The notes beneath the pieces are model-generated. The model had not been told where the DNA came from and searched no databases. It saw only the letters and a program-made list of their open reading frames with translations. A stretch of DNA of 63,960 nucleotides, filler included, from Octopus bimaculoides (lineage: Eukaryota): the NCBI RefSeq assembly GCF_001194135.2. It is 5 parts of 5 records of this genome, joined end to end, with 100 filler letters (N's around TTAATTAATTAA, not from the genome) between each part and the next. Parts side by side here need not be neighbours in the genome. Positions count along the whole stretch, not along the records: positions 13,100 to 43,303 come from NC_069000.1; 4 more parts are not named here. One strand, written 5' to 3'. The translations under genes and the position numbers were made by a program. Below, in pieces: positions 14,185-37,200 of this stretch (positions are counted from its first letter, which is position 1; each line of letters begins with the position of its first letter).

Positions 14185-14780
14185 ACTCATACACCAGTGT
14201 ATGAGTGTATATGGGCGTAACTCGTACACNNNNNNNNNNNNNNNNNNNNNNNNNNNNNNNNNNNNNNNNNNNNNNNNNNNNNNNNNNNNNNNNNNNNNNN
14301 NNNNNNNNNNNNNNNNNNNNNNNNNNNNNNNNNNNNNNNNNNNNNNNNNNNNNNNNNNNNNNNNNNNNNNNNNNNNNNNNNNNNNNNNNNNNNNNNNNNN
14401 NNNNNNNNNNNNNNNNNNNNNNNNNNNNNNNNNNNNNNNNNNNNNNNNNNNNNNNNNNNNNNNNNNNNNNNNNNNNNNNNNNNNNNNNNNNNNNNNNNNN
14501 NNNNNNNNNNNNNNNNNNNNNNNNNNNNNNNTGTTAAAGACGTTTGCCAGGAATGGCCATACATATATCTACACACATACATACATACATACATACACAA
14601 TGCATAAACACATACATATATACATACATACACACATACATACATATATACACACATACACACATACATACAAACGCACATACATACACACATAAACATA
14701 CACTCATACATACATGCACACATACATACATACATACATACACACACTTTAGCGCACATACACTTACAGACATATATACA
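13800..14780. repeat. Compound (TG/TATG)n microsatellite around a gap; many other (TA)n, (CA)n, (GA)n, (TATC)n and (CATA)n tracts flank gaps
   Basis: Directly visible. Confidence 0.95.
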
Positions 14781-16465
14781 TACGCACACACCAGAGTCGA
14801 TAAATAAAGTACGTGTTAAGCTTTGGCATAAATTCTTCCCTCTCTTCCTCTCCCGGAATCTCTTGTTCGCCGGAGAACGATCAAAGAACACCACTCGTAG
14901 CATTTCTTTCTTTCCTTCCTTCCTTCTTTCTTTCTTTATTTCTTTCTTTATTTCTCGCTCTCTCTCTCTCTCTACATATTTCATTCTTTCTTTCTCTCTC
15001 CCCCATCTCACTCTCTCTCTCATCCCACCCACCCCGCTCGAACGAACCAGTCTATGGTAGCAAAAAATGCAAAAAAAAAACCCCAACAAAAAAACAAAAA
15101 CAAAACTAAAAGACAAGAGCCAAGATAAACTTTAAAGTTTTACAAAGCGTGCAACAATTAATACTATATTGCGTTTTGAACAATAGAGATACACCNNNNN
15201 NNNNNNNNNNNNNNNNNNNNNNNNNNNNNNNNNNNNNNNNNNNNNNNNNNNNNNNNNNNNNNNNNNNNNNNNNNNNNNNNNNNNNNNNNNNNNNNNNNNN
15301 NNNNNNNNNNNNNNNNNNNNNNNNNNNNNNNNNNNNNNNNNNNNNNNNNNNNNNNNNNNNNNNNNNNNNNNNNNNNNNNNNNNNNNNNNNNNNNNNNNNN
15401 NNNNNNNNNNNNNNNNNNNNNNNNNNNNNNNNNNNNNNNNNNNNNNNNNNNNNNNNNNNNNNNNNNNNNNNNNNNNNNNNNNNNNNNNNNNNNNNNNNNN
15501 NNNNNNNNNNNNNNNNNNNNNNNNNNNNNNNNNNNNNNNNNNNNNNNNNNNNNNNNNNNNNNNNNNNNNNNNNNNNNNNNNNNNNNNNNNNNNNNNNNNN
15601 NNNNNNNNNNNNNNNNNNNNNNNNNNNNNNNNNNNNNNNNNNNNNNNNNNNNNNNNNNNNNNNNNNNNNNNNNNNNNNNNNNNNNNNNNNNNNNNNNNNN
15701 NNNNNNNNNNNNNNNNNNNNNNNNNNNNNNNNNNNNNNNNNNNNNNNNNNNNNNNNNNNNNNNNNNNNNNNNNNNNNNNNNNNNNNNNNNNNNNNNNNNN
15801 NNNNNNNNNNNNNNNNNNNNNNNNNNNNNNNNNNNNNNNNNNNNTATATATATATATATATTATGAAGAAATATTTTATAAAGGAACCTTAGAAAAACAG
15901 ACTGATACGAACCATTCGGAATGAAGTTTTCGTATTCTGTATAAGCGTTTTCTTTAAGTTTTTCACAAGCTTTTGAAAACGTTTCAAGAAACTAAACAAA
16001 ACAGTGAAAGCGCTTACACACAATACGAAAGCTTATTCCCAAAGTCATTTTTGTTTTTCTAAGATTTTTATGTTAAGAAAATCTTTCGTCAAATATAGTG
16101 ACATCGTGAGTACATCAATTATTTTTTACAACACTTTTTAAACACACATATACACACAAACACATATGTGTGTATGTATGTATGTTTGCTTGTTTAAAAA
16201 TCTGAAAAATCAAAGAAAACGAGTCAAACGATAGAGAAGCAGTTTTAGCGTGCGAAAATAGCATCATCAATGATGAAAAAGAAGTCAATAAGGACAAGAA
16301 AAACCCTTCAGAGAAGTAAGCCACTACAGCGATCAACCCTGGCACCAGGGCGACTAAATATTCCAGCCCCCAAGAGGCAAATGAATAAAACAGGATAGAG
16401 TTAAAGAAGGGAAGTTGACAGCATGCGAGAATTTGCGGCAAGCAATAACCTTCTCCCATGCTTAC

Positions 16466-16657
16466 CTCTATATAAACATCAGAAAGTTCAATATCACATT
16501 TGCTTATGAGAGCCTCGTTATCACGACTCCAGGTACCATTGCTTAGTAAAGCATTTTTTTTGTGGAATTTTCTGTCGTCAACCGCTTTCTTTCTCCAACT
16601 TAGGCTCCGTTTCAATCTGGGTTCCTGAGTGGGTTGTTTTGCTTTATTAAGGGCATT
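16466..16657 (-). CDS. ITPR-like: ITPR-like exon, variable region (NALNKAKQPTQEPRLKRSLSWRKK...SKCDIELSDVYIE)
   Basis: Acceptor ttacatctcccag|, donor GAG|gtaagc; 192 nt, phase 0-0, open. Support is from splice signals and phase rather than a recognisable motif. Confidence 0.68.
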
Positions 16658-19600
16658 CTGGGAGATGTAATTATATGAGATAGGGAGTAATGAGTAAATT
16701 GAGCGAGTGTAAATAATTTGAAACAAAAATTCAATTTGCGTATTGAATGATAAAGAAAATAACTGCACTGAAAAAAATAATTCTGAATATCTCCGTTCTT
16801 TCTGCAATTTAAGATTATTTTCAAGCTGGGATTCGGAACGGGCTGTTTAGTTTTATTAAGGCCATTCTGGAGGATGCAATTCAAGAGATAGGGCAAGATG
16901 GTTAAAATAAATAATTTAAAAAAAAACAATATGAAACAAAAAAAATTAAAAATACATATTGAGTGATAAAAAAAAATGGCTGAAAAAAAAAAAATTAATT
17001 GCAGAACATTTCTGCATTTTCTGCAGTTTCAGGGCATTTTAAATTTGGATTTCTGAGTGGGTCCTTCGACTAAATTAAGTGTGGACTTAATTGAATGGTT
17101 AAAACTAATTGTAATAAAAAATTATTTATATCGAATGTTAAACAAAATGGTTGTCTTCTACAAATTTTTATTCTTTCCTCGGCATTAATTTCTGTACAAT
17201 CTCAGTCCTCGGTAAGCTTTGTATCTTGTAATAATTTTTTTTTCACATTATTAAGAATATTCTGGAATAAGAGTGCATCAGGAGTAGCCAATGAAATGAA
17301 TAATTAAAGGAATTAATAAAGACTATAAAAATATGCAAAATGTCTACATGAAAAAGATTCAGATTTATGAAAGTACCTATACAGGGTGGTCCTTTTTTTT
17401 GTTGCTTTATTGAGAACATTCTGAAGTGAGATAGAGAGTGAAGAGTGAGATGGAAGACTTAAAAAGATCAAGTAAATATTCTGAATGTACAGAGAATGAC
17501 AAGCAGGATTCGTGCCTTAAAAATGAAATAAAATTTTAAATAGTTCTAATATTTCTCTACTTCTAAATTCTTCACAACTTCAGCTCCCAGAAGGGCGTTT
17601 TGTTTCATTAAGGGTCTTCTATGATTTGTTAGAGGGTGAGGAGTGAAAGGAACGTTTAAAAATGTAAGAAAATGGATGGAATACTACATAAGATAGCTGA
17701 CGTAACAAAATAGCAATTTTCGAAATAATTCTCATAATGCAATTAGCAAAGTAAATTAAAAAGAAAAATTTCCATGTACACTAAAGCGATTATTGCAATT
17801 GGTATGCTGCTTGATTACTTTACCACAAATCCACAGATTTATCAAGCAGTGAGAACAATAGATTAACATCAATTAGAGCGCCGAGATTGCGGTTTTCAAC
17901 TAAATATTTTAACGTCTAGAGATCAAATCTCATCTCGGTCGACCCCAGTCTTTTATTGATTAAATCGACAAAGGTGATCCTCAAAAATATGAGGTCTTCG
18001 GAATTAGCCGGAGCTGTAGAGCACTGTGCAAAGTGCCCTTTTGTTGTTCGTTCTTACTAAATCTGTCAAAATTCTGCATTCAAATCCGACCTAGGTCTGT
18101 TTTGTCTTATATTCTTCACTGTCGATAAAATAAATCACCAGTAAATTATTGTGGTCCATGGACATCTCCACAAAATCGTAACCATTTAAGGGGCGAGGCT
18201 TCGATTCCCACTTGCACTAATGCCTCTTTTTTGTGTCATGGGGGTTTATATGCTCTAATATTAGACTATTTTCTCTAATCAATATACGGTGAAGGCTTAT
18301 AATTCTATGTACAAATAAGATTCATAATTAATGGGCAGATAGCCACACTGAAAATTATAATACGAAAGCGATTGTGTTTCCTAAAGCTACAAAATATATT
18401 ATTCTATGCGAACAGACGACAGGAAATGTAACACAGTGTGTAGGCTGCTGTCATATAATGAAGGAACTTGTAGTTGAAGATGTAACCAGCAATAGGGTGA
18501 TGTAGGTTTGGACAACATAAAACTAGCTATTTATGTAAAATGACAAAAGAAAAGTAGGAGTTCTATGAAGATAAAATGGCGGAAAATTAAACGATGAATA
18601 AAGAAAGATGAAAAAAAAATGAAATAGTGTTTTATGAGAAGGCGACATTTTGGCACAAAATGGAGCAATGGATGCAAGCAGACGACAGGGAATTGTTTGT
18701 GTGCAGACGACACAAAATGAAATATGATAATAAATTGTAGCTTCGCATGTTTAATGCAGTATAGTACGGAAGACGAAGGAAACATCAGAAATGATACAGT
18801 AAAAAAGAACGTAGATAATATATATAAAAAAGTAAAAATAATATATGCATACCCATCCATTTAGTCTTTCATTTCGAAGTTTTGTTTCATAAAATTGGAT
18901 TTGCTGGAAAATAAAGAAAAAACAGTAAAAACAAACTAAGGTTTGGGCTTATCAAAATAATAAATATTTAAGTTTAAAACTATTTTTTTATTTCAGTTTC
19001 CGAGCATAAATTCACTCACTCATTTCTTCGATTATCCATTTTTTTTTAGTTCGTTATAATATACAGTCTATGCCTGAAAAATATATCCGGGTATTTCTCA
19101 ATATATGAAACTATTAGTAGCGCTTAAATATACGTAAATACATTATATATATATATATATATATANNNNNNNNNNNNNNNNNNNNNNNNNNNNNNNNNNN
19201 NNNNNNNNNNNNNNNNNNNNNNNNNNNNNNNNNNNNNNNNNNNNNNNNNNNNNNNNNNNNNNNNNNNNTATATACGCATATATATATGTACATTATCCAA
19301 ATTTTCCTTTCATGACAAGTGAACTGAGGACGGTTTGACTGTTATTTCTAGTAAATTGGCAGACCATGAACATACTTCTACACTAAGTTGTTATGGTAAC
19401 CATGTTGATGAAGATGGGAAAGGCAATGTTGATGCTGATGGGATGATGTGGAGAGATAGATAGATAGATAGAGAAAGAGAGAGGAGAAGGCAGAAAAGGA
19501 AGGACAGGAAGAGTGGAAACAGAATGCTACGTGTGATGGTGACGTCCATGATACTGATGGTGATGATGATGACGACGGCGATGACGATGAGAACGTCAAT

Positions 19601-21748
19601 GATGATGATGATGATGATGACGACAATGGTGATGACAGCGATGACGACGAAGATGTCAATGATGATGATGACGATGATGATGACGATCATATCACAACGA
19701 GGCCAACGTGGTCAACGACAAGGATATTGAGGATAATAACGTCGACGACGTCGAGGACGGCGACTACGACGACGCCAACGATGCTGCTGCTGCTGAAGAA
19801 GAAGAAACAATGACTAGGGTGGCGACGACGACGACGATGATGATGACAACAATGACGACCGTGTCGACGGTAAAGATGATGACGATGACGCAGATGAGAG
19901 TGGTACTTGTGGCAGCGACATGGTGATGGGGACTGACTAAAGAAGTAGTGACCTAAAGAGAAACAAAAACCATAAAAAAACCGGAGGTTCTACCCACCTG
20001 TAGTGCTTTACGACCAATTGAGAGGAAGGAGACTTGATTTGACGCTTGGTTCTGTTGTTCTCCATATCTGGTCTTTTTTTGCAGCATTAAATAACGGCTA
20101 GAGAAATGGTGGGGTGGAAAAAAAAAACAAACATAAAATATATTTGTCATACATCGGAGGCGGTGCTGAAAAGTTCCTGACTTTGAGTAAAAGAGAATAC
20201 AGATTCACACACTTATTGCAGCAGTCCTTCGGTTTTTCTAAGGCCTGTAAAAGAACTCGGAATATTGGGCCTTCAGCCAGGCGTTTCGCAATAGCCTAAA
20301 AGACAGGAACTTTTCAGCATGACCTCATACGTACAAACACACACACACACACACATATTATATATATATGTGTGTTTGTGTGTGTGTGTTGGCGGGCGCG
20401 CACGTATTATAACTGAAAGACTTCGATTTCCTGTACTCAGAGTTGCTCGATCCTGATCGTCAGCTGATAAACCGAATCTGGTTTTCTTTTGAAAATCCAC
20501 TGAATATTTTTTGAAAAAGGAAATGAAAGTTTGAACAAAACACTTATCCTTATGTTCTTTCGTTTAAAAACCTTTGTGAACGACACCTGCAAAGATGGCT
20601 GTTTCAAGATCACGCTTTTCATTTAATTTCTGGTTCTCGTGGTAATATCGTTATAAACGTCATAAACGTCCACACAATCGAAGACATGAAATTGCGTTCC
20701 TATTTAAGCAACGTTCCAAAATAATACATTTGACTAATCTTTTTAAAACATTTTGTGATCATGTAACACCAAAACTTGTGACTTCCAAACTCACCAGACC
20801 TAAATGTCATGGACCACTACTTTTGGAGAATCGACATCCTCATAACCACATAACTTAACTGAAGGTCGCCATTTTCCAGGTGATGTCCGAATGAATAAAG
20901 AACACATAGTACATGCATGTTAACGATTCTGGTGCCGAATTGAAGCACATAAGCGGATAATGAGACATGCAGCAAGTGCAATACCTGTGACAGGAATCGA
21001 ACCGACGAATCCTCGTCTGAGGCTCATCTAGAGTTAAGTGTCTTCGACAGACATGCAACAAATAAAATCTAGTACGGGTGACGGGAAAAGAGCAGAAGCA
21101 TTATTTTCTATTACTTCTAAACCCTGTCATTTCTTATTTCTATCGATTTTAAAATGCATGCTTTCCCTATGTGAAGCAGTTAACAATAAAGGAATAATAA
21201 CAATAATAATAATGATGATGATGATGATAATGATGATGATGGATATTAATAATAATAACAATCATAATAATAAAAATCCTTTCTACTATAGACACAAGGA
21301 CTCAAATTGTTGGCGAGGGGACTAGTCGATTACATCGACCCCAGTGTTTTACTGGTATTTAATTTATCGACTCCGAAAGGATAAAAGGCAAAGTCGACTT
21401 CAACTTAATTTGAACTCAAAACGTAACCGCTGACGAAATACTGCTAAGTATTTCGCCCGGCGTGCTAACGTTTCTGCCAGCTCGCAGCCCTTATAATAAT
21501 AATAATAATAACCCTTTCTATTATAGGCAGAAGGCCCGAAATTTGGGAGAGGGGGATAGTCAAGTACATCGACTCCAGGACGCAACTGGTACTTAATTTA
21601 TCGACCCCGAAAGGATGAAGGGCAAAGCCGACCTCGGCGGAATTTGAACTCAGAACGGGCGAAATACCACTAAGCCCGGCGTGCTAACGATTCTACCAAC
21701 TCGCCACCTTAATATTAGTAATAATAATATATAATAATAATAATAATA

Positions 21749-21822
<74 letters not shown>

Positions 21823-24800
21823 AATAATAACAGCAATCATAATAATAATAAGGATCATAAGAAAAACAAATGGATGATGCGAATAAAGAAAAAAACACGG
21901 AATAAAATAAACAATCAGCAAACAACCCAAAAGCTTTCATAAAAAGTGGAACGAAAGAACGAAACGTAGCGTCTAAGAGAGAGAGAGAGAGAGAGAAAGA
22001 ATGAAATTAAGAAAAGTAAAATGGAAGACACAGAAACAGAGCAGAGTTGGGGCCATGCAACGAATTGAAATGAAAAACCAAGAGAGAAACGAAAAGAGAA
22101 CCGAATGAAACTGAAGAATGAAAAGCCAAGCCGAAGGTTATTATAACTTTTATTCTTTTTCTTGTTTCAGTCANNNNNNNNNNNNNNNNNNNNNNNNNNN
22201 NNNNNNNNNNNNNNNNNNNNNNNNNNNNNNNNNNNNNNNNNNNNNNNNNNNNNNNNNNNNNNNNNNNNNNNNNNNNNNNNNNNNNNNNNNNNNNNNNNNN
22301 NNNNNNNNNNNNNNNNNNNNNNNNNNNNNNNNNNNNNNNNNNNNNNNNNNNNNNNNNNNNNNNNNNNNNNNNNNNNNNNNNNNNNNNNNNNNNNNNNNNN
22401 NNNNNNNNNNNNNNNNNNNNNNNNNNNNNNNNNNNNNNNNNNNNNNNNNNNNNNNNNNNNNNNNNNNNNNNNNNNNNNNNNNNNNNNNNNNNNNNNNNNN
22501 NNNNNNNNNNNNNNNNNNNNNNNNNNNNNNNNNNNNNNNNNNNNNNNNNNNNNNNNNNNNNNNNNNNNNNNNNNNNNNNNNNNNNNNNNNNNNNNNNNNN
22601 NNNNNNNNNNNNNNNNNNNNNNNNNNNNNNNNNNNNNNNNNNNNNNNNNNNNNNNNNNNNNNNNNNNNNNNNNNNNNNNNNNNNNNNNNNNNNNNNNNNN
22701 NNNNNNNNNNNNNNNNNNNNNNNNNNNNNNNNNNNNNNNNNNNNNNNNNNNNNNNNNNNNNNNNNNNNNNNNNNNNNNNNNNNNNNNNNNNNNNNNNNNN
22801 NNNNNNNNNNNNNNNNNNNNNNNNNNNNNNNNNNNNNNNNNNNNNNNNNNNNNNNNNNNNNNNNNNNNNNNNNNNNNNNNNNNNNNNNNNNNNNNNNNNN
22901 NNNNNNNNNNNNNNNNNNNNNNNNNNNNNNNNNNNNNNNNNNNNNNNNNNNNNNNNNNNNNNNNNNNNNNNNNNNNNNNNNNNNNNNNNNNNNNNNNNNN
23001 NNNNNNNNNNNNNNNNNNNNNNNNNNNNNNNNNNNNNNNNGAGGTACGTGGCTTAGTGGTTAGGGTGTTGGACTCATGATCGTAAGATTGTGGTTTCGAT
23101 TCCTGGACCGGGCGACGCGTTGTGTTCTTGAGCAAAACACTTCATTTCACATTGCACCAGTCCACTCAGCTGGCAAAAAATGAGAGTAATCCTGCGATGG
23201 ACCGGCGTCCTGTCCAGGGTGTGTGTGGAGGAATATATATACTCCACAGAAACCTGGAAACCGACCTTTATGAACTGGCATGACTCGATAAGGTAACCTT
23301 TACTTTTTACCTAGTTGAGACCTTCAGCGCTCTCGGTCTCCGAACCACATTTCCCTGCTCATCGCTATCGGGGCAGATATTGCTGTCCGTAAGAGGGAGC
23401 CCCACGTGTCAGAGTGGCTATGCCAGTGCATCTCCCTCGCTATCATCCGGGGCAACGCTTTTTCCATTCTGTCTGCAGATGGTATGAAGCCTTAAAATAA
23501 GATATAAGCTCTGATTCTGTTTAATAGCGTAGAATCTGAGTATTCCACTGACACACGTATCCATAGTAAGAATGCATGTCATTGGACGTACCACGTGTTA
23601 GCTTGATCAGCCACACTGTTTTGTACTGGCCCAGGGCATTCATTTTGGAGGTTTCCTCCTCTTAGATTGAGCCGAGGAGCTCAATCTACCCTTATGAAAA
23701 TCTATTTAACCCATAGATGGCACCGTGACAGGAGCTGCCGTTCTGGGTCAAAATGAACCTTGGAGAAATGGTGATTAAGAGGTAAATGTACACTACCCAC
23801 AAATCCAGAACTCCAGAACTTAAGTTCAAAGTTTAAACAATCATTTAAGATTTGAGTGACCATTAACAATTTAAGCATCAAAAGTTTAAATGACTGTTAA
23901 AAATGTTATTGGGCGTTAAATTCAACTGACCATTAAAAAGAATGTATCGCCAGTTAAGTGTGACGGTGTTAAAAGTATGAGTGATCGTTAAAAATCCGAC
24001 CGAGTATCAAAAATGTGACTGGTCGTTCATAATGGGACTAACTGTTAAAAATTTGACTGACCGTTGGAAATGTAATTGGCCGTTAAAACTCCGACTGACC
24101 ATTAAAAATGTGACCGGCCATAAACAATCTGACTGATTGTTAAAACTTTGCTGACCGTTAAAATTTGACTGACCATTAAAACTATGACTGACCATTAAAA
24201 GCCTGACTGCTTACATTATGATTGCTCGTTAAAATTGGCTTTAAGTTTCATATCTTGGCACAAGGCCAGCAATTTTAGGAGAGGGGGTAAGTCGATTACA
24301 TCGACCCAGTACACAGCTGGTACCTTATTTTATCGACCCTCGAAAGGATGAAAAGCAAAGCGGACCCCAGCGACATTTGAGCTCAAAACATAAAGTCAGA
24401 CGAAACGCCGCTGGGCATTTTGTCCGGCACAGTTCATTGCCTTATGATTACCTGTAAATATTACGGTTGATTAAGGCGGTGAGTCGGCAGAATCGTTAGC
24501 ATGCCGGGCAAAATGCTCAGCGGCATTTCGTCCGTCTTTACGTTCTGAGTTCAAATGCCATCGAGGTCGACTTTGCTTTTTATTCTTTCAGGGGCAGATG
24601 AAATAAGTACCAGTTAAGCACTGGGGTCGACGTAATCGCTTTATCCTTTAATCCGAAATTGCTGGCCTTGTACTAAAATTTGAAACTAATATTACGACCG
24701 ATTGCTAAAACTTTGTCTGACTGTTAAATATTTCACTGACGGCCAAAAAAATGTTCGACAATCCCAAGCGTTGAAAGACAGAAAAACAAATTCTCAAAGA

Positions 24801-25880
24801 ATTTATAGGAAAGAGGTGGATGATAAAGAAAATAAGATAAGAACAATATATGAATGATTACTTACTGTTCTTTGATAGAATTTGTGGAAACCTGCATTCT
24901 GTATCGAACTGCCATGAAGAATACCTCTTCTCTCGTAGACAGGAAGTAATCATACAAAGATTTCTAAGAAAAAATATAAAAATAATATATATATAGTTGA
25001 AATTTATAGGAAAATAAAAGACAAAGACAGGTGTATGAACAACAGGCAAGTGTATTAGTTTGACGCTCGGGAAAATGAAAAAGTCTTTTACGTTTCGAGC
25101 CTACGCTCTTCATCGGAAAGGAATAAGAGAAAATAAACAGAGAGAGAGAATGAAAAGAACTTGTAGATTTCAGAGGTCCAGCATGGCGAATATATATGTA
25201 TATATATAAAAGAAATAGTGGTACGATAAGGCACCAATGTTTGCTGGAAATAACTGTCGATAACGACACGACACTATGTAAAGCTTCACTGATATATATA
25301 TACTGGCAAAGGTATATGAGCGCAGCGAACACAGAAAATGTTCGTCTTACCTCAAAGCAGAATATCGTAAAAATGGACAACTCAGAATTAATAATCTAGG
25401 ACCCGAGTTTTGGACGTAAATTTGATTAGCCCTCATCAGCTACATTCACATGTGACTAAAGTGATACTATTGTATTGCAACGATATTTAAAATTTTTATA
25501 GAAAGCATTTTCATTGATCTCGGTTGTTAACGGCCAGGCGTTCAACCGAATATAATGGCAAGATGTAGCGATATTTTAAGATTTCGTCACATGTGAATCT
25601 ATATACATATATATAAAACGTCAGTAGATCATATATCCGAAAAAGAAGCGTACTCTAAAGGCCAGAGACGCAATGTATTTATAGGAAGTTAATCATATAA
25701 CTGGTCATGGTTTCACATTCATAAAGCACATGGCCTTATAGACGGCTCGTCGGACTCTAGTGACTGCAGGCATATAATCCGCGGCCATTAAAATCCCGAC
25801 GAGTGGTCTATAAGACTATGTGCTTTACAGATGTGAAACCATTGGCCACTCTATGATCGGCCATATAATTAACTTCATAC

Positions 25881-25921
<41 letters not shown>

Positions 25922-28900
25922 TATATATATGTTGGCTTATTAGCAATTTAACAGCCTAAAGGCAAGTTTATAGACGTCACTAAAGTGACAGATGGTGCTA
26001 AGTAGTACCAGCATTGCTAGAAATAAGAGTCAAAACAACTCAATGGCCACAGAAGTACTATCATAATGATTGACAAGGGAGAAAAACTCCCTAGCGGACG
26101 TAACCAGATCACCGGTGATGGAGTTATTTTTTAATGGTAGAGCCCCCAGCTTGGTTAGAAGTCGGAGTCATTAATGTTCTCTTATGAAGAGTATTACTGA
26201 AGGGAAATATAAAAGGAAGGCGATGATGGGGAGGAAGAAGAGGATGATGCAGAAAGTGATGGTAGTTATGACGATGATGATGGCGATAATGAAGAGCATG
26301 TTGATGAAAATGGAGGACAGTGGCCAGAGGTAGTGGCTTTAATCGAAAGAGAGTACTGTCTACTTACTTGCACATTCCGGTTTGCATTAAAGAGCATGAT
26401 GACAATAAATGAGAGCACCTCTCGTATTATTGCCTCGCTCTTCCGGGCAAGATGTGGCAGCGATGTAATAATGGCGTTGTGTGAATTAATTGCGTTCTGT
26501 ATCTCACGAATGCAATCAGTTTGTCTGAATAGGAAGAAGAAGAAGAAAAAATATGCAATTAAAAATGGCGCACGAAAATTGTTCGAGAAAGATTTCACAA
26601 CGAACAGGTTTGGGACGTTACCTTAGTTCACTGGTAGTGAACAGCTGACAGATCTGACAACAGCTAATACATCTCCAGCGTTAGAAGCTGTGCAAAGGCA
26701 ATAATAATAAGAAGAAGAATAACAGTCGCTTACTTTTTTATCTTCGGTGTTGAAGAACGCGTCTCCCAATCTTCGGGAAGTTTTCTTTCATCATTCATGA
26801 CAATGGCTCGCAACAGCTGCAGGCATTTTATATCCAAGTCTTCATTGGCAGCACATTTGGACCGACTTGAAGTGTGGGCTTTGATGGAAATACTGTTTAA
26901 TGTTGTACCATGAAATGAAATCAAATCAAATCAAAACTCTTCAGACGCATTAAGAAAATTCTAATCTCACATAAATCTTCAGATTATTTGGAAATCTTGT
27001 TTATCTGTTATCTTTTACTTACTTGAGCTATTGGACTGTGGCAATGCTGGAGCACCGCTTTGAATGGTTTAGCCAAGTAAAGCGACTCCAGCACTTATGC
27101 TTGCAGTTCGGTACTTTTTTCTATGGGTCTCTTTTGCAAGGGGACACGTAAAGAAACCAACATCGGTCGTCTAACAGAGGGGAACAAACAAAACACACAC
27201 ACACACACANNNNNNNNNNNNNNNNNNNNNNNNNNNNNNNNNNNNNNNNNNNNNNNNNNNNNNNNNNNNNNNNNNNNNNNNNNNNNNNNNNNNNNNNNNN
27301 NNNNNNNNNNNNNNNNNNNNNNNNNNNNNNNNNNNNNNNNNNNNNNNNNNNNNNNNNNNNNNNNNNNNNNNNNNNNNNNNNNNNNNNNNNNNNNNNNNNN
27401 NNNNNNNNNNNNNNNNNNNNNNNNNNNNNNNNNNNNNNNNNNNNNNNNNNNNNNNNNNNNNNNNNNNNNNNNNNNNNNNNNNNNNNNNNNNNNNNNNNNN
27501 NNNNNNNNNNNNNNNNNNNNNNNNNNNNNNNNNNNNNNNNNNNNNNNNNNNNNNNNNNNNNNNNNNNNNNNNNNNNNNNNNNNNNNNNNNNNNNNNNNNN
27601 NNNNNNNNNNNNNNNNNNNNNNNNTATATATATATATATGTATGTATATGCTTGTGTGTCTGTGTTTGTCCCCTCAAAATCGCTTGACAACTAATGCTGG
27701 TGTGTTTACGTCCCCGTAACTTAGCGGTTCGGCAAAAAGACCGACAGAATAAGTACTAGGCTTACAAAGAATAAGCTCTGGGGTCGATTTGCTCGACTAA
27801 ATGCGGTGCTCCAGCATGGCCGCAGTGAAATGACAAACAAGTAAAAGAGTAAAAGAGAGTGTCGTGTGAATCATACCGTATTATGTTCCTAAGTATTTTA
27901 TATCTAAGTAAATCATTTTAAACAAAGCATGCAGCACTTACGCCAAAAGATCCACCAGTTTCTTCGCCGGGGCATATTTCTTTGTTGGTTTCTTTTCATT
28001 CTGCGCAACAAAACAGCGGACAAAACTCTGGAACTCATCGCCAAGTGGCAGTTCTTCGTCGCCACCAATACTTGTATATTCTGCAACAAAAACATGAAGA
28101 ATAAAAAATGAAATATTTCTGCTTCTAATATTATCCCATTCTAAGGCGGCGAGCTGGCAGAAACGTTAGCACGCCGGGCGAAATGCTTAGCGGTATTTCG
28201 TCTGCCGTTACGGGGTCGATAAAGTAAGTACCAGTTATGCACTGGGGTCGATGTAATCGACTTAACCCCTTTGTCTGTCCTTGTTTGCCCCCTCTATGTT
28301 TAGCCCCTTGTGGGCAATAAAGAAATAAGAAACGTCAGCACGCCGGGCGAAATGCTTAGCGGTATTTCTCCTGTTGCTATGTTCTGAGTTCAAATTCCGC
28401 CGATGTCGATTTTGCCTTTCATCCTTTCGGGGTCGATAAATTAAATATCAGTTGCGTACCGGGGTTGATCTAATCGATTGACACCCACCCACAAAATTTC
28501 GGGCCTTGTGCCTAGAGTAGAAAAGAATATCGATTCTTTGCCTTTTCCGATTCTCTCCAGGGACCCTGTCAATTCGCCATCCCTGTATACGTTTTTTCCC
28601 TTTTTATCATTTCAGTCAGTTGACTGCGGCCATGCTGGGGCATCTCCTCGAAAGGATTTTTTTAGTCGAACAAATCTAGCGCAAGACCATTTTTTAAACC
28701 TTCTATTTATACTCTCGGTCTCATTTGCTAAATCGCTAAGTTACGGGAATGTAAACACACCAATACCGGTTGTCAAGCGATGGTGGTGGACAAACACAGA
28801 CCCAAAGACAGACAGACAGACACACATATGTATATATATCAACACACACACACGCACACACATATATACAACGGGCTTTCAGGCACTATCAAATCGACTC

Positions 28901-30402
28901 GCAAGGCTTTGGTCAGCCCGAGGCTATAGTAGAAGACACTTGCCCATGAGGTCACGCAGCGGGACTGAACCCGGAGCTATGTGACTGAGAAACGAGCTTC
29001 TTACCACACAGCCATGAACGCTCTTTGTTTTATATATTTTTTGCTAGGATGTGATCTAAATGCGATTTGGTTGCTATTTCTAGTAGGTCGAACTACCACG
29101 CAGAGTATAGGACATTGAGGATAGAACAAGGAATAACTTACCATTTTTGATGTTTTTACACTTGAGTTGTGCTGCCACCGTGTTGTGACCACAGTAGACA
29201 ATCTTACAATTCCTGGCAAATGTATGGAACTTGGCGTTGAGTTCAATCTCAGCTGCATAATATTCCATGTTGCCCTTAAAGTATACGAAACATAAGGTTA
29301 TTAGCTTCTTACATATGAAAACAGCTCTGGATTTACGTTAGTTTTAAAATTTACTTAACAGAGTCTCGATAAAATTGACATACGAAAACAAGGTAATTGG
29401 TTCTTTATATGAGAACAAGGCCCTGAAATTAGCTTTTAAATAGATTTTTGTAGTACTTAATGAAATAAAGAAGGTAACCAGTTTCTTACTTTTGATTATG
29501 GGGTGCTGGAATTGTGTTAGTTTTAAAAAATTATTTTGTAAGATTTGGATAAAATATACAGACTATAACAATGTATAAGGTTTCTTTCATTAGTACAAAA
29601 CCCTTAAATTATTTGATTCTTTAAATTTATTTGGTGAAGTTTGTATAAAATATACAGACTATAAAGTAGTTGGTTTCTTGCATTAAAACAAGACACTCGA
29701 ATTGCATTAGTTTTTAAAACTTATTTAAAAGAGTCTCGAAATAAATGTAGACGATATGTTAACTGGCTTCTTACACTAAACAACAAGGCCCTTTAGCTTA
29801 GGTATATTCTCTAAATTTATTTGGTAGGGTCTTGATGTTTGACCAAAAGAACCGGCTATTGCAAGCAAAATTAAATATTGAAACAAGAGCACTCAGAGAG
29901 CGCAAACCTCCGCCAATGCAACACCAACGTCCTCTCAATGATTATCCGGAGAGAATTTTCAAAATGAGGTTATCTGAAATAAACTCGATTGCTCTCACAA
30001 ACAAGAATACTAAAAATGAACCCGACCGCTCTCAAAATTTTAGTAAAAAAATAGGAAAAATAATTCAGAATCCTTGTCTGGTACTGGATCGATCCCAAAA
30101 TCTAATCAGTTCGTGCCAGTCACGAGGCCAAACATCTCTGGAAGTTTCATACGAAACCATTCAGTAGTTCTTGAGATATCTTGTCCACAGACAAACAAAC
30201 AAACACGACTGAAAACAATACTTCAGCCTTCGTTAAGGCGGAGGTAATAATAATCCTTTCTACTATAGACATAAGGCCTGAAATTTAGGGAAGCGGGGAG
30301 AGTCGATTACTCAACTGGCGGATTTTGAACTCAGAACGTAGCGACGGGCGAAATACTGCTAAGTATATCGTCCATCGTGCTAACGATTCTGTCAGCTCAC
30401 CG

Positions 30403-30444
<42 letters not shown>

Positions 30445-30565
30445 TGATAATAATATTTCCTTACACGTCTTACTGCTATTTGGTCATCTTCAAAGCTTAT
30501 TTCACTTGAAAATTTTTCCAAGATTCCAATTAGCATCTGAAATAATAATAATAACAATAATAATA

Positions 30566-31435: not shown

Positions 31436-34232
31436 GAATTTACAAAAAGAAACAAAAGACGAAGACGGGTGTGTAAACAACAAACAGATGTATTAGTTTA
31501 ACGCTCGGGAAGTGAGAAAGTCTTTAACGTTTCGAGCCTACGCTCTTCAACAGAAAGGAACACAGAAATAAACAGGGAGAAAAAGGTTTAGTGGCTAGCG
31601 ATCTATCATGGCGATCTCTCTCTCTATATATATATTATCTTTTACTTGTTTTAATCGTTAGACTGCGGACATGCAGGGGCGCCGCATCGAAGAATTTTTA
31701 GTCAAATGATTGGTCCTTCTGGCATTATTTTTATCGGTCTCTTTTTCAGAACTGCTAAGTTATGGAGACGTAAACAAAACAACGCCGGTTGTCAAGCAGT
31801 AGTGGGGGACAAACAATGACAAAAAAATACACACATTTATACAACAGGCTTCTTTCAGTTTCTTTCTATCAAATCCACTGGATCGGCCCGAGGCTATAGT
31901 AGAAGACTCTTGCCCAAGATGCCACGCAGTGTAATTGAACCTGGGACCATGTGGTTAGGAAACAATTTTTTTTTACCACACAGTTACGGCTTTATGTATT
32001 GGGTTGACAAGAAAGTAATTTCGGTTTTTTTAGTGTGAAACCAAAGTCATTTTTTTTTCATACAAAGGATAATCTTTAATCAATTATATATTTTCTATTT
32101 TGTTCGATGACCTTTTGCCATATTTCTGGCAACTTCATGATTTGGCGCTCATGGACCTTATCAGCCAAAGACTGAAGCATGTGCGATTTCAGGTCATCAT
32201 CATTATTAAAAGTTTTACCATTCAAAGCATTTTGCAAATTTCAAAATAAATGGTAATTTGATGGTGCAAGATCAGGGTTATATGGTGGATGTGACATCGA
32301 TTCCCAACCAAGCTCCATTAAAATTCCCCGAGTTAGCAAAGACGTGCGTGGTCTAGCATTGCCATGGTAGAACACGATTCCTTTATGATTTGCCAATTTC
32401 GACCGTTTTTCTTTGATTGCTTCCTCCAGTTTCATTATTCGTTGATAGTAAACATCTGAATTAATCGTTTGGTTCCTTGGAAGCAGCACAAAATACACAA
32501 CACCCCTGTAATCCAACCAAATCGACAGCATGACCTTTCTTTGATGCAATTCAGCTTTCGATATGGTTTGTGCTGGTTCATTACACTTGATCGTTTTTTG
32601 ACAATGATCGTTTTTTGACCATGATCGTTTTTTGACCATGATCGTTTTTAATTGATGTTATTGTAGACAATCCATTTTTCATCACCAGTGCTGATTCGGT
32701 TAAAAAAGGTCAATTTCATTGCGTTTGCGATGCATATCACAAATATAGATTCGTTGTATTAACTGAATCTCTTTCAATTTATGTGGAACCGAAATATCGA
32801 ACTTCTTAACGAGTCCCGAACATTTTAAGCAATNNNNNNNNNNNNNNNNNNNNNNNNNNNNNNNNNNNNNNNNNNNNNNNNNNNNNNNNNNNNNNNNNNN
32901 NNNNNNNNNNNNNNNNNNNNNNNNNNNNNNNNNNNNNNNNNNNNNNNNNNNNNNNNNNNNNNNNNNNNNNNNNNNNNNNNNNNNNNNNNNNNNNNNNNNN
33001 NNNNNNNNNNNNNNNNNNNNNNNNNNNNNNNNNNNNNNNNNNNNNNNNNNNNNNNNNNNNNNNNNNNNNNNNNNNNNNNNNNNNNNNNNNNNNNNNNNNN
33101 NNNNNNNNNNNNNNNNNNNNNNNNNNNNNNNNNNNNNNNNNNNNNNNNNNNNNNNNNNNNNNNNNNNNNNNNNNNNNNNNNNNNNNNNNNNNNNNNNNNN
33201 NNNNNNNNNNNNNNNNNNNNNNNNNNNNNNNNNNNNNNNNNNNNNNNNNNNNNNNNNNNNNNNNNNNNNNNNNNNNNNNNNNNNNNNNNNNNNNNNNNNN
33301 NNNNNNNNNNNNNNNNNNNNNNNNNNNNNNNNNNNNNNNNNNNNNNNNNNNNNNNNNNNNNNNNNNNNNNNNNNNNNNNNNNNNNNNNNNNNNNNNNNNN
33401 NNNNNNNNNNNNNNNNNNNNNNNNNNNNNNNNNNNNNNNNNNNNNNNNTATATATATATATATATATATATATGTATACACACACATATATATAGAGAGA
33501 GGGAGAGAGACAGACTGAGAGACAGTGGGAGAGAGACAAAGGGAAAGACAGAGACAGACAGACACAAAAAGAAAATTGATGCATTAACATGAAAAAATGT
33601 ACTGTACATATACGCTAAATAAGTGCTTAATTAAATATTCTTTGTTAAACTCAAACATGTTATGAAATCACAGTAAACACAGCGGGAAAAAAAACTCCAA
33701 GAAACTAAAATGGATCGGCTAAAATGATTGCTGAAAGCAACACATTTGGAATAAAAAACAATAATTCACAAATCTAATTTACACTGCATTCTAAGTAATG
33801 TACGCCTTTCTTTAAAAGTAACTTAAAATTCTTAGTTAACCATCATTTTTAATAACGCGAAAATATTATTATAAATTCATTTACAAATGGAAAAAATACA
33901 AGATTTGAGCTGCGTCCATTGCCATTATCATAATTATGAAGGTTGTGGGAACAGAGTATCAGATAGTTCGATGTGAGAATGGAATAATTACATGGAATAA
34001 GATTAAGAGTAGATAATTCTAATAAGATGGTCTTCCATAAGTTGTTTACAAGGGAGATAAACGATTAAGAAGAAGAAACACAACTTACCACAAGTCCTTT
34101 GGCAAGGTTTTCTGTAATGGTTATTTCACTTGAAAATAATGTTTTATCAGGCATGTAGTATAACATATAAAATACCTTAAAAGAAACAAATATATAGTTA
34201 AGTGGATATATATATATGTTNNNNNNNNNNNN

Positions 34233-34264
<32 letters not shown>

Positions 34265-37200
34265 GTGGAAATATAAAAGGAGCAAAAATGGTGTAGAATC
34301 AGTATACACCACGTGGCAAAATTATGAAGTGAAAATATGTGTTAAACTTATATAAAAAAAGGGGAAGAGAAATGCCTTCATTCCACATAATAACACAGTC
34401 CACTTTCTAATTAATTAATTAAAAAGTAAATTATTTAAACTGAAGCGAAACATAAATATTCAGTGTGTGTGTTTTATTGGCAGAATGACCCTCCCAAAAT
34501 ACAACGATATTCATTCTAGCAAGCAGTTTCACATCAGGAATCTTGTGAAACAGACACGAAGATACATGGACACATACATAGATATTGTCTCACACTCAAG
34601 TGCACATACATGCACCCGAAAATTCTCTCTCTCACACACACATACACAAGTAAATCTCATAAAAGCTTGCTCACAAAATTCATTGAGTATATTTATTCTT
34701 TTTCTGGAATTACGGAGATGTACTTGCATAGCAAATGACCTGATCTGAGATCGTGTGCTGAAACAAAAACAATTGCAGCGTGGAAGGTGTTTATAAGCCG
34801 TTTAAAAACACACAAAAACCGTTAGATTCACTTCAACATTTAAATTTAATTTGCCAAAGTATTTCTGTCGCTTTGAGATCGCAACTTGTTCACTGACAAA
34901 ATTCTGAGATTCAGCACGGAATTTTGTCAGTGAACAGGTCGTCGCAGTCTCAAAGAGACGAAAATATTTTGACAAATTAAATTTAAATGTTGAAATGAAT
35001 CTAACGGTTTCTGTGTGTTTTTAAATGGCTCATAAACTCCTTCCACGCTGCAATTGCTTATATTTATTTTATAAAATGACATATCTATGTCTACATAAAT
35101 TAGTTTACATGCAAGAAAAAGAGATTTGTATTCATTTCATACAATGTAGTGTCTATGCATATAAAAATTAGTTTACGCGCCAAAGAAAAATAGTGACAGC
35201 AGATTTATTAAACATATTCATTTTATACAATGTAATGCCTATGAATATAAAATTAAATGTAATGTTTAAAAAGTAAATATGTTAATGTTTTTATAATATA
35301 CAATGCGATATCTATGCATATAAGAATTTGCTTACGTCTAAAAGAAAAAGAGTGACAGAAGATCTATTTTAATGCATTTATTTATGTAATGTCTATTTTT
35401 TATTTTCTCTTTGTTTCAGTTATTGGGCTGCGATCATGCTGGGGCACTACCATAAAGGGGTTTAAGTCGAACAAATCTACCCAAGTAAGTATTTTTGTTT
35501 TAAAGTCGCATGCTTAGTCTTTCGGTTATTTTCGTCGAACCGGTAGTTTACGGGGTACGTAAACTAAACAACACCGTCTGTCAAGCAGTAAGTAGGTGGA
35601 CAAACACAGAAACAAAGGTACACACATTTATATCCATCCATCCACCTATCTATCTGTCTGTCTGTTTGTCTATCTGTCTATCAGTAATTGTATATATACA
35701 ATGCAATGAATTAACTTACATGCAAGAAGGGGAGTACACCTTCCAGTACATAGTAGAGATTGCCGTGGACCATTCCTCTTGTGTCACTGCTATCAGCAAT
35801 AGCACTGCAAAGGGAGACAAGAAAGTTACAGACAATGCACATTACACTGAAACAGCTTGTTATTAACTACAGTACCAATGTAACGGAGATTTACAATAAA
35901 TATATTTGTCGAATACTGTTTCTCGCTCAGGGATTTAAAACTAGTGGTTTTTCTCTTTATGAGATCAGCAACTGTGTGTCGCTTTAAAAGTATATACTGG
36001 AGCAAGGTCAAGTGGCTGCCATCTCTAGCCGGTGCTTAACCTGTACCGAGGAAAGGAAATTACCCAGAAACCATTGGTCTGCAGGTATCACTGAAGCTAG
36101 TATAATACTGTAAGCAATAAACTCTCTTGCTCACAGTATACGGACACAGACCATGTGTCGTAGCCAGCCGGGAAAGATGTTTTCCTGAGGCTAAACAGTA
36201 GACTTTATTTATAGAATCATATCCTTACGTATTGCTACAAGAAGTCGGGCCACTTTTCTCTTTTGTCCCGCCAGTCTCATGGTTACAATACAGAAGAATT
36301 CAGCAGTTTGGAATGAAACTTAAAGTGGTTAGTTTCGTCATTTTTACAACTCTTCAGGACGCATCATCTCTTCCTTCCAAGCCGCGGAAGGCAAGTATAT
36401 TTCGTAGGAGATAATGTCGGATTTTCTGATACAATGCTTCTGTTTTGTAATTGTTTTAGTCATTGAGCTGTGGCCAGATTGAGGGCACCGCCTGGGAGGG
36501 CTGTAGCCAAACAAAAGATCCACAACAACAACACCAATAATAACGACCACAGTGTGAAGACCGATCACAATAACAACAACACCAACAATAGCAGCAACAA
36601 CATCATATTATGAACAGCAGTAACAACAACAACAATAATAACAACAACAGTGGTAACAGCATCAGCAACAAGTACAACAGTGACAACAACAAAAGCAAGA
36701 AGTACACCGACGATAAAGCGAATGATTATTTTGTGAATAAAAGAAGGATTTTAAAAGCATGAAAAGAGTAACCTTTTGTCTGGATAAGTTTTCAGCAAAG
36801 AAGTGGTCCTTTCTCGGTAACGGGTGACAGACTCAAACAGCTCATTGACAGTTTGAACAGTCGTGGAAAGGAAGTCCCAAATTTTTCTGTCAGAAAAGAT
36901 AAATAAATAAGTTAATTAATGGATAAATAAATGAAGAAAAAAAAAAAAAGAATAAATGAATAAGCAATAATTGCTGCGTCAAATTTGTACGGTTTTTCTG
37001 TTCTCAAAAATAACTGCAAAAAGTGTTTGAACTAAATTCCGAAATGTCTACAGGTACCGTCAGTGTTTCAATATATTTGGTAATGTTAAGACACAATTAC
37101 TGCTCATTCATTATTCTTTATCTATCTATCTATCTATCCTTCTATCTATCTATCTATGTTGCGTTGAGTTCTTGAGCAAAATACTCCATCTCACTTTGTT

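What the first reader, a model, noticed from the sequence alone, without database searches (positions are those of the whole stretch)
16617..17700. Six tandem copies of a 3' splice site plus exon start upstream of the last ITPR-like exon, all retaining AG
The real acceptor (ag|aat gcc ctt aat aaa; NALNKAKQPTQEPRLKRSLSWRKK, start 16657) is echoed at 16866 (NGLNKTKQPVPNPSLKIILNCRKN), 17085 (STLNLVEGPTQKSKFKMP*), 17261 (NILNNVKKK), 17420 (NVLNKATKKR) and 17618 (KTLNETKRPSGS*). Spacings are 209, 219, 176, 159 and 198 nt. Every copy keeps the AG at the homologous position despite heavy divergence. Use of the nearest copy shifts the frame to a premature stop. The array could be a decayed exon-duplication series, a set of decoy acceptors, or a source of NMD-coupled or truncated isoforms of the channel's variable region.
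Basis: partly seen in the sequence, partly recalled or inferred. Interest (0 to 1): 0.7.

Follow-up and report, generated by a model that had tools for sequence, protein, structure and literature searches.

The report
Decaying tandem copies of a splice junction
A roughly 209-base piece spanning the end of an intron and the start of a real IP3-receptor exon was copied head-to-tail five times into the intron, and the extra copies are decaying like neutral DNA, so this is an ordinary relic rather than a conserved set of alternative splice sites.

Summary
On the minus strand, five degenerate copies (u2-u6) of the junction "pyrimidine tract-AG|AATGCCCTTAATAAAGCAAAAC..." lie head-to-tail upstream of the real acceptor (u1, exon 16657-16466). 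Spacings are 209/219/176/159/198 nt. Self-BLAST gives E=1e-32, 1e-10 and 2e-3, and the piece holds no other copies.

The exon is genuine. It is 192 nt, phase 0/0. A distant relative has it at the same length with the same AG|...|GT borders (dN/dS about 0.1). It lies downstream of clear ITPR exons on the same strand.

The array is lineage-specific. A close relative (L001-L003) has it unit for unit. The distant relative (L004) lacks it in the 7.4 kb available upstream.

The decoys show no constraint:
- Between the two close species the exon is 96.9% identical, unrelated intron 84.3%, the decoy array 79.6% and the decoy cores 84.4%.
- Only 2 of 5 decoy AGs survive in the relative (two became AA, one GG).
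- Unit spacing drifts by indels.
- No decoy has its own donor, and every decoy gives a premature stop.

Best reading: an old microhomology-bounded tandem amplification of the intron-exon junction, now neutral intronic relics. Exon definition would favour the acceptor nearest the donor. Occasional NMD-bound use of the nearest decoy cannot be excluded without RNA data.

The parts
16466..16657 (-). Real coding exon of the ITPR variable linker. It is 192 nt, 64 codons, phase 0/0, and encodes NALNKAKQPTQEPRLKRSLSWRKK...CDIELSDVYIE. Its first 81 nt or so are the exon-derived part of repeat unit u1.
   Evidence: 96.9% identical to L001 against 84.3% for unrelated intron (Fisher p=1.6e-7). L004 has the same 192-nt length and the same AG|...|GT borders, and nucleotide homology stops within 2 nt of the exon ends. 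dN/dS is 0.10 against L004 and 0.24 against L001.
16658..16659 (-). AG of the real 3' splice site (tctcccAG|AAT).
   Evidence: Identical in L001-L003. L004 also has an AG at this border. It is the only AG of the six from which the frame stays open to the donor.
16464..16465 (-). GT of the real 5' splice site (GAG|gtaagc). It is the only good donor on this strand between 17800 and 16400.
   Evidence: A crude position-weight scan scores it 11.3. No other GT in the array region reaches 5. It is conserved in L001 and L004.
16577..16784 (-). Repeat unit u1, the source copy: about 127 nt of intron 3' end, the AG, and the first 81 nt or so of the exon. Both ends carry a CAGAA(T/A) microhomology. Unit ends are approximate.
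   Evidence: Unit alignments. u1/u2 homology runs to about 16587. The microhomology is read directly from the sequence and its role is inferred.
16785..16993 (-). Decoy unit u2, pseudo-acceptor tcctccAG|AATGGCCTTAATAAAAC with exon-start homologue at 16866. It is the youngest and best-preserved copy. Its use would add 209 nt, shift the frame, and reach a stop at about 16612-16614.
   Evidence: 77% identical to u1 over 86 nt. AG is kept in L001-L003. Frame and stop.
16994..17212 (-). Decoy unit u3, pseudo-acceptor caattaAG|TCC with homologue at 17085. It is the most decayed copy, with A at -3 and a weak pyrimidine tract.
   Evidence: In L001 the homologous AG is GG, and about 17 nt of the unit are deleted.
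17213..17388 (-). Decoy unit u4, pseudo-acceptor ttattccAG|AATATTCTTAATAAT with homologue at 17261.
   Evidence: AG has become AA in L001-L003.
17389..17547 (-). Decoy unit u5, pseudo-acceptor tctcacttcAG|AATGTTCTCAATAAAGCAA with homologue at 17420. It has the best pyrimidine tract of all six copies.
   Evidence: AG has become AA in L001-L003.
17548..17745 (-). Decoy unit u6, pseudo-acceptor aaatcatAG|AAGACCCTTAATGAAACAAAAC with homologue at 17618. It is the distal end of the array.
   Evidence: AG is kept in L001 and L002.
18853..18903 (-). Candidate 51-nt cassette micro-exon (QIQFYETKLRNERLNGW, phase 0/0). It is preceded by ttctttattttccAG and followed by gtatgc. If real, it is the exon immediately upstream of the array. 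Unverified.
   Evidence: It lies inside the longest perfect identity run between the window and L001 (66 nt, 18905-18840). No RNA structure signal (z=+1.1). No Rfam match. Not found in L004.
19998..20097 (-). Candidate upstream exon (100 nt; C + RYLMLQKKTRYGEQQNQASNQVSFLSIGRKALQ), with donor CAG|gtgggt. It is in frame with the exons on both sides but no homologue confirms it.
   Evidence: Sequence. Frame bookkeeping with exon 24963-24866. No homologue found. The only similarity to ITPR3 residues 1668-1688 is insignificant at -1.2 bits.
24866..24963 (-). Confirmed ITPR exon (KSLYDYFLSTREEVFFMAVRYRMQVSTNSIKE...). It anchors the array downstream of the conserved helical region.
   Evidence: Homologous ORFs P0052 and P0053 carry LDYFLSTREEVFFMAVRDRM.
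26368..26524 (-). ITPR exon (QTDCIREIQNAINSHNAI...MLFNANRNVQ), with good splice sites on both sides.
   Evidence: Sequence. Homologue P0052.

Best explanation
The array is a relic of tandem amplification, by unequal exchange or replication slippage, of a roughly 209-nt segment that straddles one intron-exon junction of an inositol-trisphosphate-receptor gene. The segment holds about 127 nt of intron 3' end (branch region, pyrimidine tract, AG) and the first 81 nt or so of a 192-nt exon in the receptor's variable linker. It is bounded by a CAGAA(T/A) microhomology.

A tandem duplication puts each new copy upstream of the copy that stays joined to the rest of the exon and its donor. The extra copies therefore became intron; they are intronised exon fragments. 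Each began as a complete 3' splice site without a donor.

The gene tolerates them for two inferred reasons. The flanking introns are long (>2 kb), so splice sites are paired across the exon and the acceptor nearest the only donor is preferred. Any mis-splicing to a decoy adds a length that is not a multiple of three and meets an early stop, so such transcripts would be lost or harmless.

Since then the copies have decayed without detectable constraint. The survival of AG in all five decoys of this genome is largely chance plus the way the copies were recognised.

Shown: the array, its derivation from a real conserved exon, its age and lineage restriction, and the lack of constraint.
Inferred: the duplication mechanism, exon definition as the reason the real site wins, and the fate of mis-spliced RNA.
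For: 1. Tandem homology is significant and local. Self-BLAST gives E=1e-32, 1e-10 and 2e-3, and no copy lies elsewhere in the 30-kb piece on either strand.

2. Homology between units covers intron and exon parts alike and ends about 81 nt into the exon. No decoy has a usable donor.

3. The exon came first.
- It is a real coding exon under purifying selection, with the same 192-nt length and AG|...|GT borders in L004 and dN/dS=0.10.
- L004 has no second copy of the junction in the 7.4 kb upstream or anywhere in its 17.7 kb on that strand.

4. The array is old. It is present unit for unit in L001-L003. Orthologous units are 68-93% identical and paralogous units 30-66%, so there has been no recent homogenisation.

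5. There is no constraint on the decoys.
- Identity between the two close species is 96.9% for the exon, 84.3% for unrelated intron, 79.6% for the decoy array and 84.4% for the decoy cores.
- Decoy AGs are kept in 2 of 5 units. P(<=2 of 5) is 0.15-0.26 under neutrality.
- Unit spacings are 198/159/176/219/209 in the window and 203/182/169/196/197 in L001.

6. Every decoy gives a premature stop after 12-84 codons. The nearest one does so in both species.

7. Gene identity.
- RIH domain PF01365 scores 31 bits against a cut-off of 22.3.
- The upstream exons match human ITPR3 residues 1261-1383.
- Homologue P0008 is named inositol 1,4,5-triphosphate receptor type 1 by its source.

8. Literature.
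- Intragenic tandem duplications that duplicate splice signals, followed by intronisation of one copy, are documented (PMC3265369; PMC2891723).
Against: In this genome all five decoys keep AG, and u2, u4 and u5 have pyrimidine tracts and a -3 C as good as the real site. Retention of all five has a nominal chance of about 0.03-0.15, so a weak past constraint cannot be ruled out.

The AG+25-nt core is somewhat better preserved among paralogues than the rest of the unit: 3.8 of 5 matches per column against 3.0 of 5. I attribute this to anchoring and ascertainment but have not proved it.

No transcript data were available, so use of the real acceptor and non-use of the decoys are inferred from conservation and reading frame only.

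Only two other lineages could be compared. Only 7.4 kb upstream of the exon was available in the distant one.

The organism was not identified.
Confidence: 0.8

Rival explanations
1. The copies are maintained as working alternative or decoy 3' splice sites. On this view they give NMD-coupled (unproductive) or truncated isoforms that tune receptor levels, or they soak up splicing factors and so regulate inclusion of the variable-region exon.
For: All five decoys keep AG in this genome. u2, u4 and u5 have acceptor features as good as the real site. All give premature stops, as poison sites do. The real exon is symmetrical (192 nt, phase 0/0), and the 75 nt of intron after it are about 96% conserved, which is typical of regulated cassette exons. 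u2's AG and tract are kept in both species.
Against: Three of five decoy AGs are lost in the close relative. Decoy cores are conserved no better than unrelated intron, and the array evolves slightly faster than it. Spacing drifts by indels. The array is absent in a distant relative that keeps the exon. No decoy has a donor, so there are no poison cassette exons. No transcript-derived protein containing a decoy was found, though the databases searched hold almost only genomic ORFs.
Confidence: 0.08
2. The array is the remains of whole-exon tandem duplications, that is, a decayed cluster of mutually exclusive alternative exons for the variable linker.
For: The copies begin with exon-like sequence whose translations echo the real peptide, such as NGLNKTKQPVPNPSLK. 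Tandem exon duplication is a known source of mutually exclusive exons (own knowledge).
Against: Homology to the exon ends about 81 nt in and then jumps back to intron sequence. The period of about 209 nt is mostly intron. No copy has a donor or an open frame. Unit lengths are not multiples of three and differ between species.
Confidence: 0.04
3. The repeat is a pre-existing intronic minisatellite or transposon-derived array, and the exon acquired its 5' part by exonisation of one unit. The direction of descent would then be repeat to exon.
For: The piece is rich in dispersed and simple repeats.
Against: The distant relative has the full exon, including the repeated N-terminal part NALSKAKQPTPELKLKRSKSWKKK, but no array. 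No copy of the unit lies elsewhere in the 30-kb piece. The unit has no transposon hallmarks.
Confidence: 0.03
4. The similarity is due to chance in AT-rich sequence, or the array is an assembly artefact of a gapped draft genome.
For: The region is AT-rich (about 33% GC), and the assembly has many N gaps.
Against: BLAST E-values go down to 1e-32. Motif matches are absent from shuffles and from the rest of the piece. There is no gap within 15845-19165. The same array appears in three independent assemblies of a related species.
Confidence: 0.01

Closest known systems
Intragenic tandem duplication of splice signals followed by intronisation of one copy (Rogers' model; Hellsten et al. 2011, PMC3265369; Lehmann et al. 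2010, PMC2891723)
   Same: A short head-to-tail duplication inside a gene copies splice signals together with coding sequence. The redundant coding copy ends up inside an intron and the protein is unchanged. Premature stops in the intronised copy, with NMD as a safety net, are described for the Drosophila cases.
   Different: In those cases an exonic AG|GT proto-splice site is duplicated and a new intron is created. Here an existing intron-exon junction is duplicated, so an existing intron is lengthened by exon-derived sequence. The duplication also happened about five times, giving an array of pseudo-acceptors.
Competing or alternative 3' splice sites under exon definition (Carranza, Shenasa & Hertel 2022, PMC9225289). 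Classical cis-competition constructs with duplicated splice sites are cited from own knowledge only.
   Same: Several acceptors of similar strength compete for one donor, and the flanking introns are long. The rule that the sites closest across the exon pair with each other predicts use of the most downstream copy, which is the one conserved as the real site.
   Different: Those are used alternative sites or engineered constructs. Here the upstream sites show no conservation and no evidence of use.
Tandem exon duplication giving mutually exclusive exons (own knowledge)
   Same: A local tandem duplication within a gene that includes the start of an exon and its acceptor.
   Different: The units lack the 3' 111 nt of the exon and the donor. 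Their frames are broken. They cannot be spliced in as alternative exons.
Poison exons or regulated unproductive splicing (AS-NMD) sites (own knowledge)
   Same: Use of any decoy would introduce a premature stop.
   Different: Functional poison sites are typically conserved, often very highly. These decoys are not: AG is lost in 3 of 5 in a close relative, and identity is at or below the intron background.
Intronic minisatellite or VNTR (own knowledge)
   Same: Head-to-tail units of about 160-220 nt inside an intron.
   Different: The units are old and strongly diverged (30-66% identity between paralogues). Copy number is the same in two species and in three individuals. The array is derived from a splice junction rather than from simple sequence.

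Membership tests
Tandem (head-to-tail) segmental duplication array | Significant sequence homology between successive units in the same orientation | tested here: met
   Self-BLAST E=1e-32, 1e-10 and 2e-3. The repeat finder families D1 and D2. Unit alignment.
Tandem (head-to-tail) segmental duplication array | Roughly constant period with contiguous units | tested here: met
   Spacings are 198/159/176/219/209 nt with no unrelated sequence between units. The variation comes from indels, as the comparison with L001 shows.
Tandem (head-to-tail) segmental duplication array | Local origin, not a dispersed repeat family | tested here: met
   No other copy in the 30-kb piece on either strand. A genome-wide test was not possible.
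Selected alternative or decoy 3' splice sites (AS-NMD) | AG and pyrimidine tract conserved between species above the intron background | tested here: not met
   2 of 5 decoy AGs are kept in L001-L003. Decoy cores are 84.4% identical against 84.3% for unrelated intron. The array as a whole is 79.6%.
Selected alternative or decoy 3' splice sites (AS-NMD) | Splice junctions to the sites seen in transcripts | not testable with these tools
   No RNA-seq is available. The protein databases returned only genomic ORFs for this exon.
Mutually exclusive exon cluster from tandem exon duplication | Each unit holds a complete exon homologue with acceptor and donor, an open frame and a compatible length | tested here: not met
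   Homology ends about 81 nt into the exon. There is no donor scoring >=5 in 17800-16467. All units have stops within 12-84 codons.
Recursive splice sites | A 3' splice site juxtaposed to a 5' splice site (YAG|GTRAGT) | tested here: not met
   The decoys read AG|AAT, AG|AAG or AG|TCC. None is followed by GT.
Inositol 1,4,5-trisphosphate receptor gene (host gene) | RIH (RYDR_ITPR) domain and collinear similarity to ITPR on the same strand | tested here: met
   PF01365 scores 31 bits against a cut-off of 22.3. PDB ITPR3 residues 1261-1383 match. A homologue is named IP3 receptor type 1 by its source. Further exons at 26524-26368 and 24963-24866 have homologues.
Inositol 1,4,5-trisphosphate receptor gene (host gene) | The 16657-16466 exon is spliced into ITPR mRNA | not testable with these tools
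   This is inferred from strand, position inside the gene, frame compatibility, conserved borders and dN/dS of 0.10. No full-length protein or transcript containing the exon was retrievable.

The most novel reading that the evidence does not exclude
In this species the five pseudo-acceptors are kept, all with AG and three with acceptor features as good as the real site. They would act as a graded set of competing 3' splice sites that divert part of the ITPR pre-mRNA into NMD-bound products, or slow commitment to the variable-region exon. That would make the array a lineage-specific dial on receptor dosage or isoform choice, and the sister species would be dismantling it.
Probability: 0.05. Interest if true: 0.5.

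Novelty: new member of a known kind. Interest (0 to 1): 0.2.

Why it matters
As it stands this is a tidy but ordinary case of gene-structure evolution. It shows that a tandem duplication across an acceptor is tolerated, because the copies land in the intron and the exon-proximal site keeps pairing with the donor. It also shows how fast such pseudo-sites then decay.

It is a natural cis-competition experiment: five upstream acceptors of similar strength are apparently ignored. That could serve to test exon-definition rules in this animal group if RNA data were added.

The practical gains are for annotation:
- It confirms a real 192-nt linker exon of the IP3 receptor, which is symmetrical and so could be a cassette exon. 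The exon carries a basic KRxxS motif.
- It flags a possible 51-nt micro-exon.
- It warns gene predictors against choosing the decoy acceptors.

Tried and rejected
1. Tandem Repeats Finder at minimum score 30 did not report the array because the units are too diverged. Gapped self-BLAST and seed-based repeat finding were needed.

2. No full-length ITPR protein or spliced transcript was obtained to fix the exon chain.
- All three homologue searches and the exhaustive representative search returned only short genomic ORFs.
- An exact look-up of the window's own ORF found nothing.
- Transcript support is therefore untested.

3. The upstream exon 20097-19998 was searched for in L004 by BLASTN and TBLASTN, with no hit. 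Its apparent match to ITPR3 residues 1668-1688 is insignificant at -1.2 bits.

4. Naming the species behind SRR11869385/90/91 from the literature failed. The one paper found is unrelated.

5. Rfam found nothing in the piece. The ultra-conserved 66-nt block has no fold signal, so a structured RNA was rejected there.

6. The AATAAA inside the core was considered as an intronic polyadenylation signal. It is kept in only some units and species (reading) and was not pursued.

7. A 9-bp complementarity between the body of u6 and the real acceptor was considered (inverted repeat I3). It is at chance level among 29 such pairs and weakened in L001, so it was not pursued.

8. A proper MaxEnt splice-site score could not be computed because the tables are not on hand. 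Only tract composition, the -3 base and a crude donor matrix were used.
Full report
**What is there**

The gene reads on the minus strand. Read that way, the real junction is ...ctatctcatataattacatctcccAG|AATGCCCTTAATAAAGCAAAACAACCCACTCAGG... (exon start 16657). It is preceded by five degenerate copies of itself, with homologous exon-start positions at 16866, 17085, 17261, 17420 and 17618.

- The repeat finder reports a 33-nt family with five members at 64-82% identity, and an 86-nt pair between u1 and u2 at 77%.
- Gapped self-BLAST shows that the homology is not confined to the motif. It aligns 17147-16796 with 16941-16587 over 366 nt (E=1e-32), 17620-17397 with 16868-16634 (E=1e-10), and 17498-17394 with 17342-17235 (E=2e-3).
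- The AG+28-nt motif reaches 20/30 matches only at four of the six sites in the whole 30-kb piece, on either strand. Shuffled sequence gives 0-1 hits.
- A self-comparison of the piece finds several dispersed repeat families, none of which touches the array.

Tandem Repeats Finder missed the array because the units are too diverged.

**Corrections to the anatomy**

- The real exon is 16657-16466: 192 nt, 64 codons, phase 0 at both ends, donor GAG|gtaagc.
- Homology between units covers about 127 nt of intron and only the first 81 nt or so of the exon. It then returns to intron sequence.
- Both ends of the unit carry CAGAA(T/A), a plausible microhomology for the original duplication. This is an inference from the sequence.
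- The array therefore spans about 17745-16577.
- No GT in 17800-16467 on this strand resembles a donor. The only one scoring well is the real donor. The copies are pseudo-acceptors without exons of their own.

**The host gene and the exon are real**

Upstream on the same strand lie clear IP3-receptor exons.
- The peptide from 42931-41020 hits the RIH domain PF01365 above Pfam's cut-off.
- The same region matches human ITPR3 residues 1261-1383.
- Homologous ORFs include one named IP3 receptor type 1 by its source.
- Further exons at 26524-26368 and 24963-24866 (KSLYDYFLSTREEVFFMAVRYRM...) have homologues.

The exon of interest lies in the poorly conserved linker that follows. An exhaustive HMMER search found it in two other places only.
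- P0001 is 95% identical. It comes from Logan assemblies of three runs and gave loci L001-L003.
- P0050 is 69% identical. It lies on a 272-kb ENA contig and gave locus L004.

In L004 the exon has the same 192-nt length and the same AG|...|GT borders. Nucleotide homology begins and ends within 2 nt of those borders. dN/dS is 0.10, with synonymous sites saturated. It is therefore a genuine coding exon. That it is spliced into ITPR mRNA is inferred from position, strand and frame, not shown.

**History**

L001 aligns with the window over 2.9 kb and carries the whole array, unit for unit. Orthologous units are 68-93% identical and paralogous units 30-66%. The array therefore predates the split of the two species by a wide margin and has not been homogenised since.

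L004 keeps the exon, including the part that is repeated here. It has no second copy of the junction in the 7.4 kb upstream or elsewhere in its 17.7 kb on that strand. So the exon is ancestral and the array is a lineage-specific derivative of it, not the other way round.

**Are the decoys maintained?**

Identity between the window and L001:

| Region | Identity |
|---|---|
| Unrelated intron (18990-17701) | 84.3% |
| Exon | 96.9% (Fisher p=1.6e-7 against unrelated intron) |
| Decoy array | 79.6% (p=0.005, lower than unrelated intron) |
| Decoy cores, -10..+25 | 135/160 = 84.4% (p=1) |

The decoy AGs in L001-L003:

| Unit | State |
|---|---|
| u6 | kept |
| u5 | AG became AA |
| u4 | AG became AA |
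| u3 | AG became GG |
| u2 | kept |

With 16-20% divergence per site, two or fewer of five identical AGs is expected 15-26% of the time. That is neutral behaviour.

Unit spacing differs between the species: 203/182/169/196/197 in L001. There is thus no constraint on length or frame.

Within this genome, survival of all five AGs has a nominal probability of about 0.03 if the 66-74% identity to u1 is used per site. It rises to about 0.15 if one allows that paralogue identity counts change on both branches. In that alignment 3.7% of all adjacent column pairs are invariant across the five decoys. This is a weak, post-hoc signal, and the sister species contradicts it.

**How it most likely works**

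Each duplication placed a complete 3' splice region, but no donor, upstream of the copy that stays attached to the rest of the exon.

The flanking introns are long: at least 2.2 kb upstream and more than 3.3 kb downstream. [quoted passage not shown] That favours the real, most downstream AG. The exon would be 192 nt with the real acceptor, against 401-1153 nt with a decoy.

Any slip to a decoy adds 209, 428, 604, 763 or 961 nt, none a multiple of three. A stop follows after 12-84 codons. For u2 this is also true in L001. Such products would be NMD substrates or truncated, which is an inference.

This is the junction-spanning counterpart of documented intragenic tandem duplications that duplicate splice signals and intronise one coding copy (PMC3265369; PMC2891723).

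u2 is the only decoy close enough to the donor to be a realistic competitor. It keeps its AG and tract in both species. If any decoy is used, it is this one.

**Verdict**

The 'decayed duplication' reading is right, with the correction that junctions rather than whole exons were copied. The 'decoy or NMD isoform source' reading has no support from conservation but needs RNA data to be closed. This is a new example of a known kind of event and of modest interest.

**Limits**

- No transcript data were available.
- Only two other lineages could be compared.
- The organism was not identified; a literature search for the run accessions failed.
- Splice-site strength was judged by simple features only.

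Noticed in passing
window 18840-18905 (minus strand); candidate exon 18903-18853: This is the longest perfect identity run between the window and the related species (66 nt, in an intron that is otherwise 84% identical). It has the anatomy of a 51-nt phase-0/0 micro-exon: ttctttattttccAG|CAAATCC...GGATGG|gtatgc, encoding QIQFYETKLRNERLNGW. It has no fold signal and no Rfam match, and it is not seen in L004. If real, it is the true upstream neighbour of the array.
   Followed up: partly
window 16391-16465 (minus strand, intron just after the real exon): The first 75 nt or so of the downstream intron are about 96% identical to L001, against 84% for unrelated intron. Together with the exon's symmetry (192 nt, phase 0/0), this is the usual signature of a regulated cassette exon.
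   Followed up: partly
window 16600-16620 (minus strand), within the repeated part of the exon: The exon encodes a basic motif: RLKRSLSWRKK here, KRRLS in L001 and KRSKS in L004. It looks like a PKA/PKG-type phosphorylation consensus, as found in the regulatory linker of vertebrate IP3 receptors (own knowledge). The decoy copies have lost it.
   Followed up: no
window 19998-20097 (minus strand): A candidate 100-nt exon with good splice sites fits the reading frame between exon 24963-24866 and the 16657 exon. No homologue was found, and its resemblance to ITPR3 residues 1668-1688 is insignificant. Directly after it, at 19555-19860, lies a long GAT/GAC trinucleotide-rich stretch.
   Followed up: partly
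window 16649-16672 and 17576-17599: A UUCUGGGAG in the body of decoy u6 is complementary to the real acceptor CUCCCAG|AA (9 bp perfect, 18 of 24 overall). It is weakened to 7 bp in L001 and is probably chance.
   Followed up: no
window 32241-32657 (minus strand): A remnant of a mariner-type transposase lies inside an ITPR intron (PF01359 Transposase_1, E=2.5e-20).
   Followed up: yes
window 21260-21760, 24244-24687, 28126-28526, 30317-30454; also 34761-35065, 39739-39994, 25707-25842: A dispersed short repeat family (70-88% identity between copies) and several self-complementary, MITE-like palindromic elements populate the introns. None overlaps the array.
   Followed up: partly
window 14230-14531, 15196-15844, 19166-19268, 22174-23040, 27210-27624 and further N runs: The assembly has many gaps. 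ITPR linker exons could be hidden in them, especially in 22174-23040, which lies between exon 24963-24866 and the candidate exon at 20097. The exon chain given here may therefore be incomplete.
   Followed up: no
L004 5318-5560: The distant relative's intron holds a 240-nt element with a tRNA-like start (GGCCTAGCGGTTAGAG...GGTTCAATCCCAGG), flanked by (TA)n. It looks like a tRNA-derived SINE.
   Followed up: no
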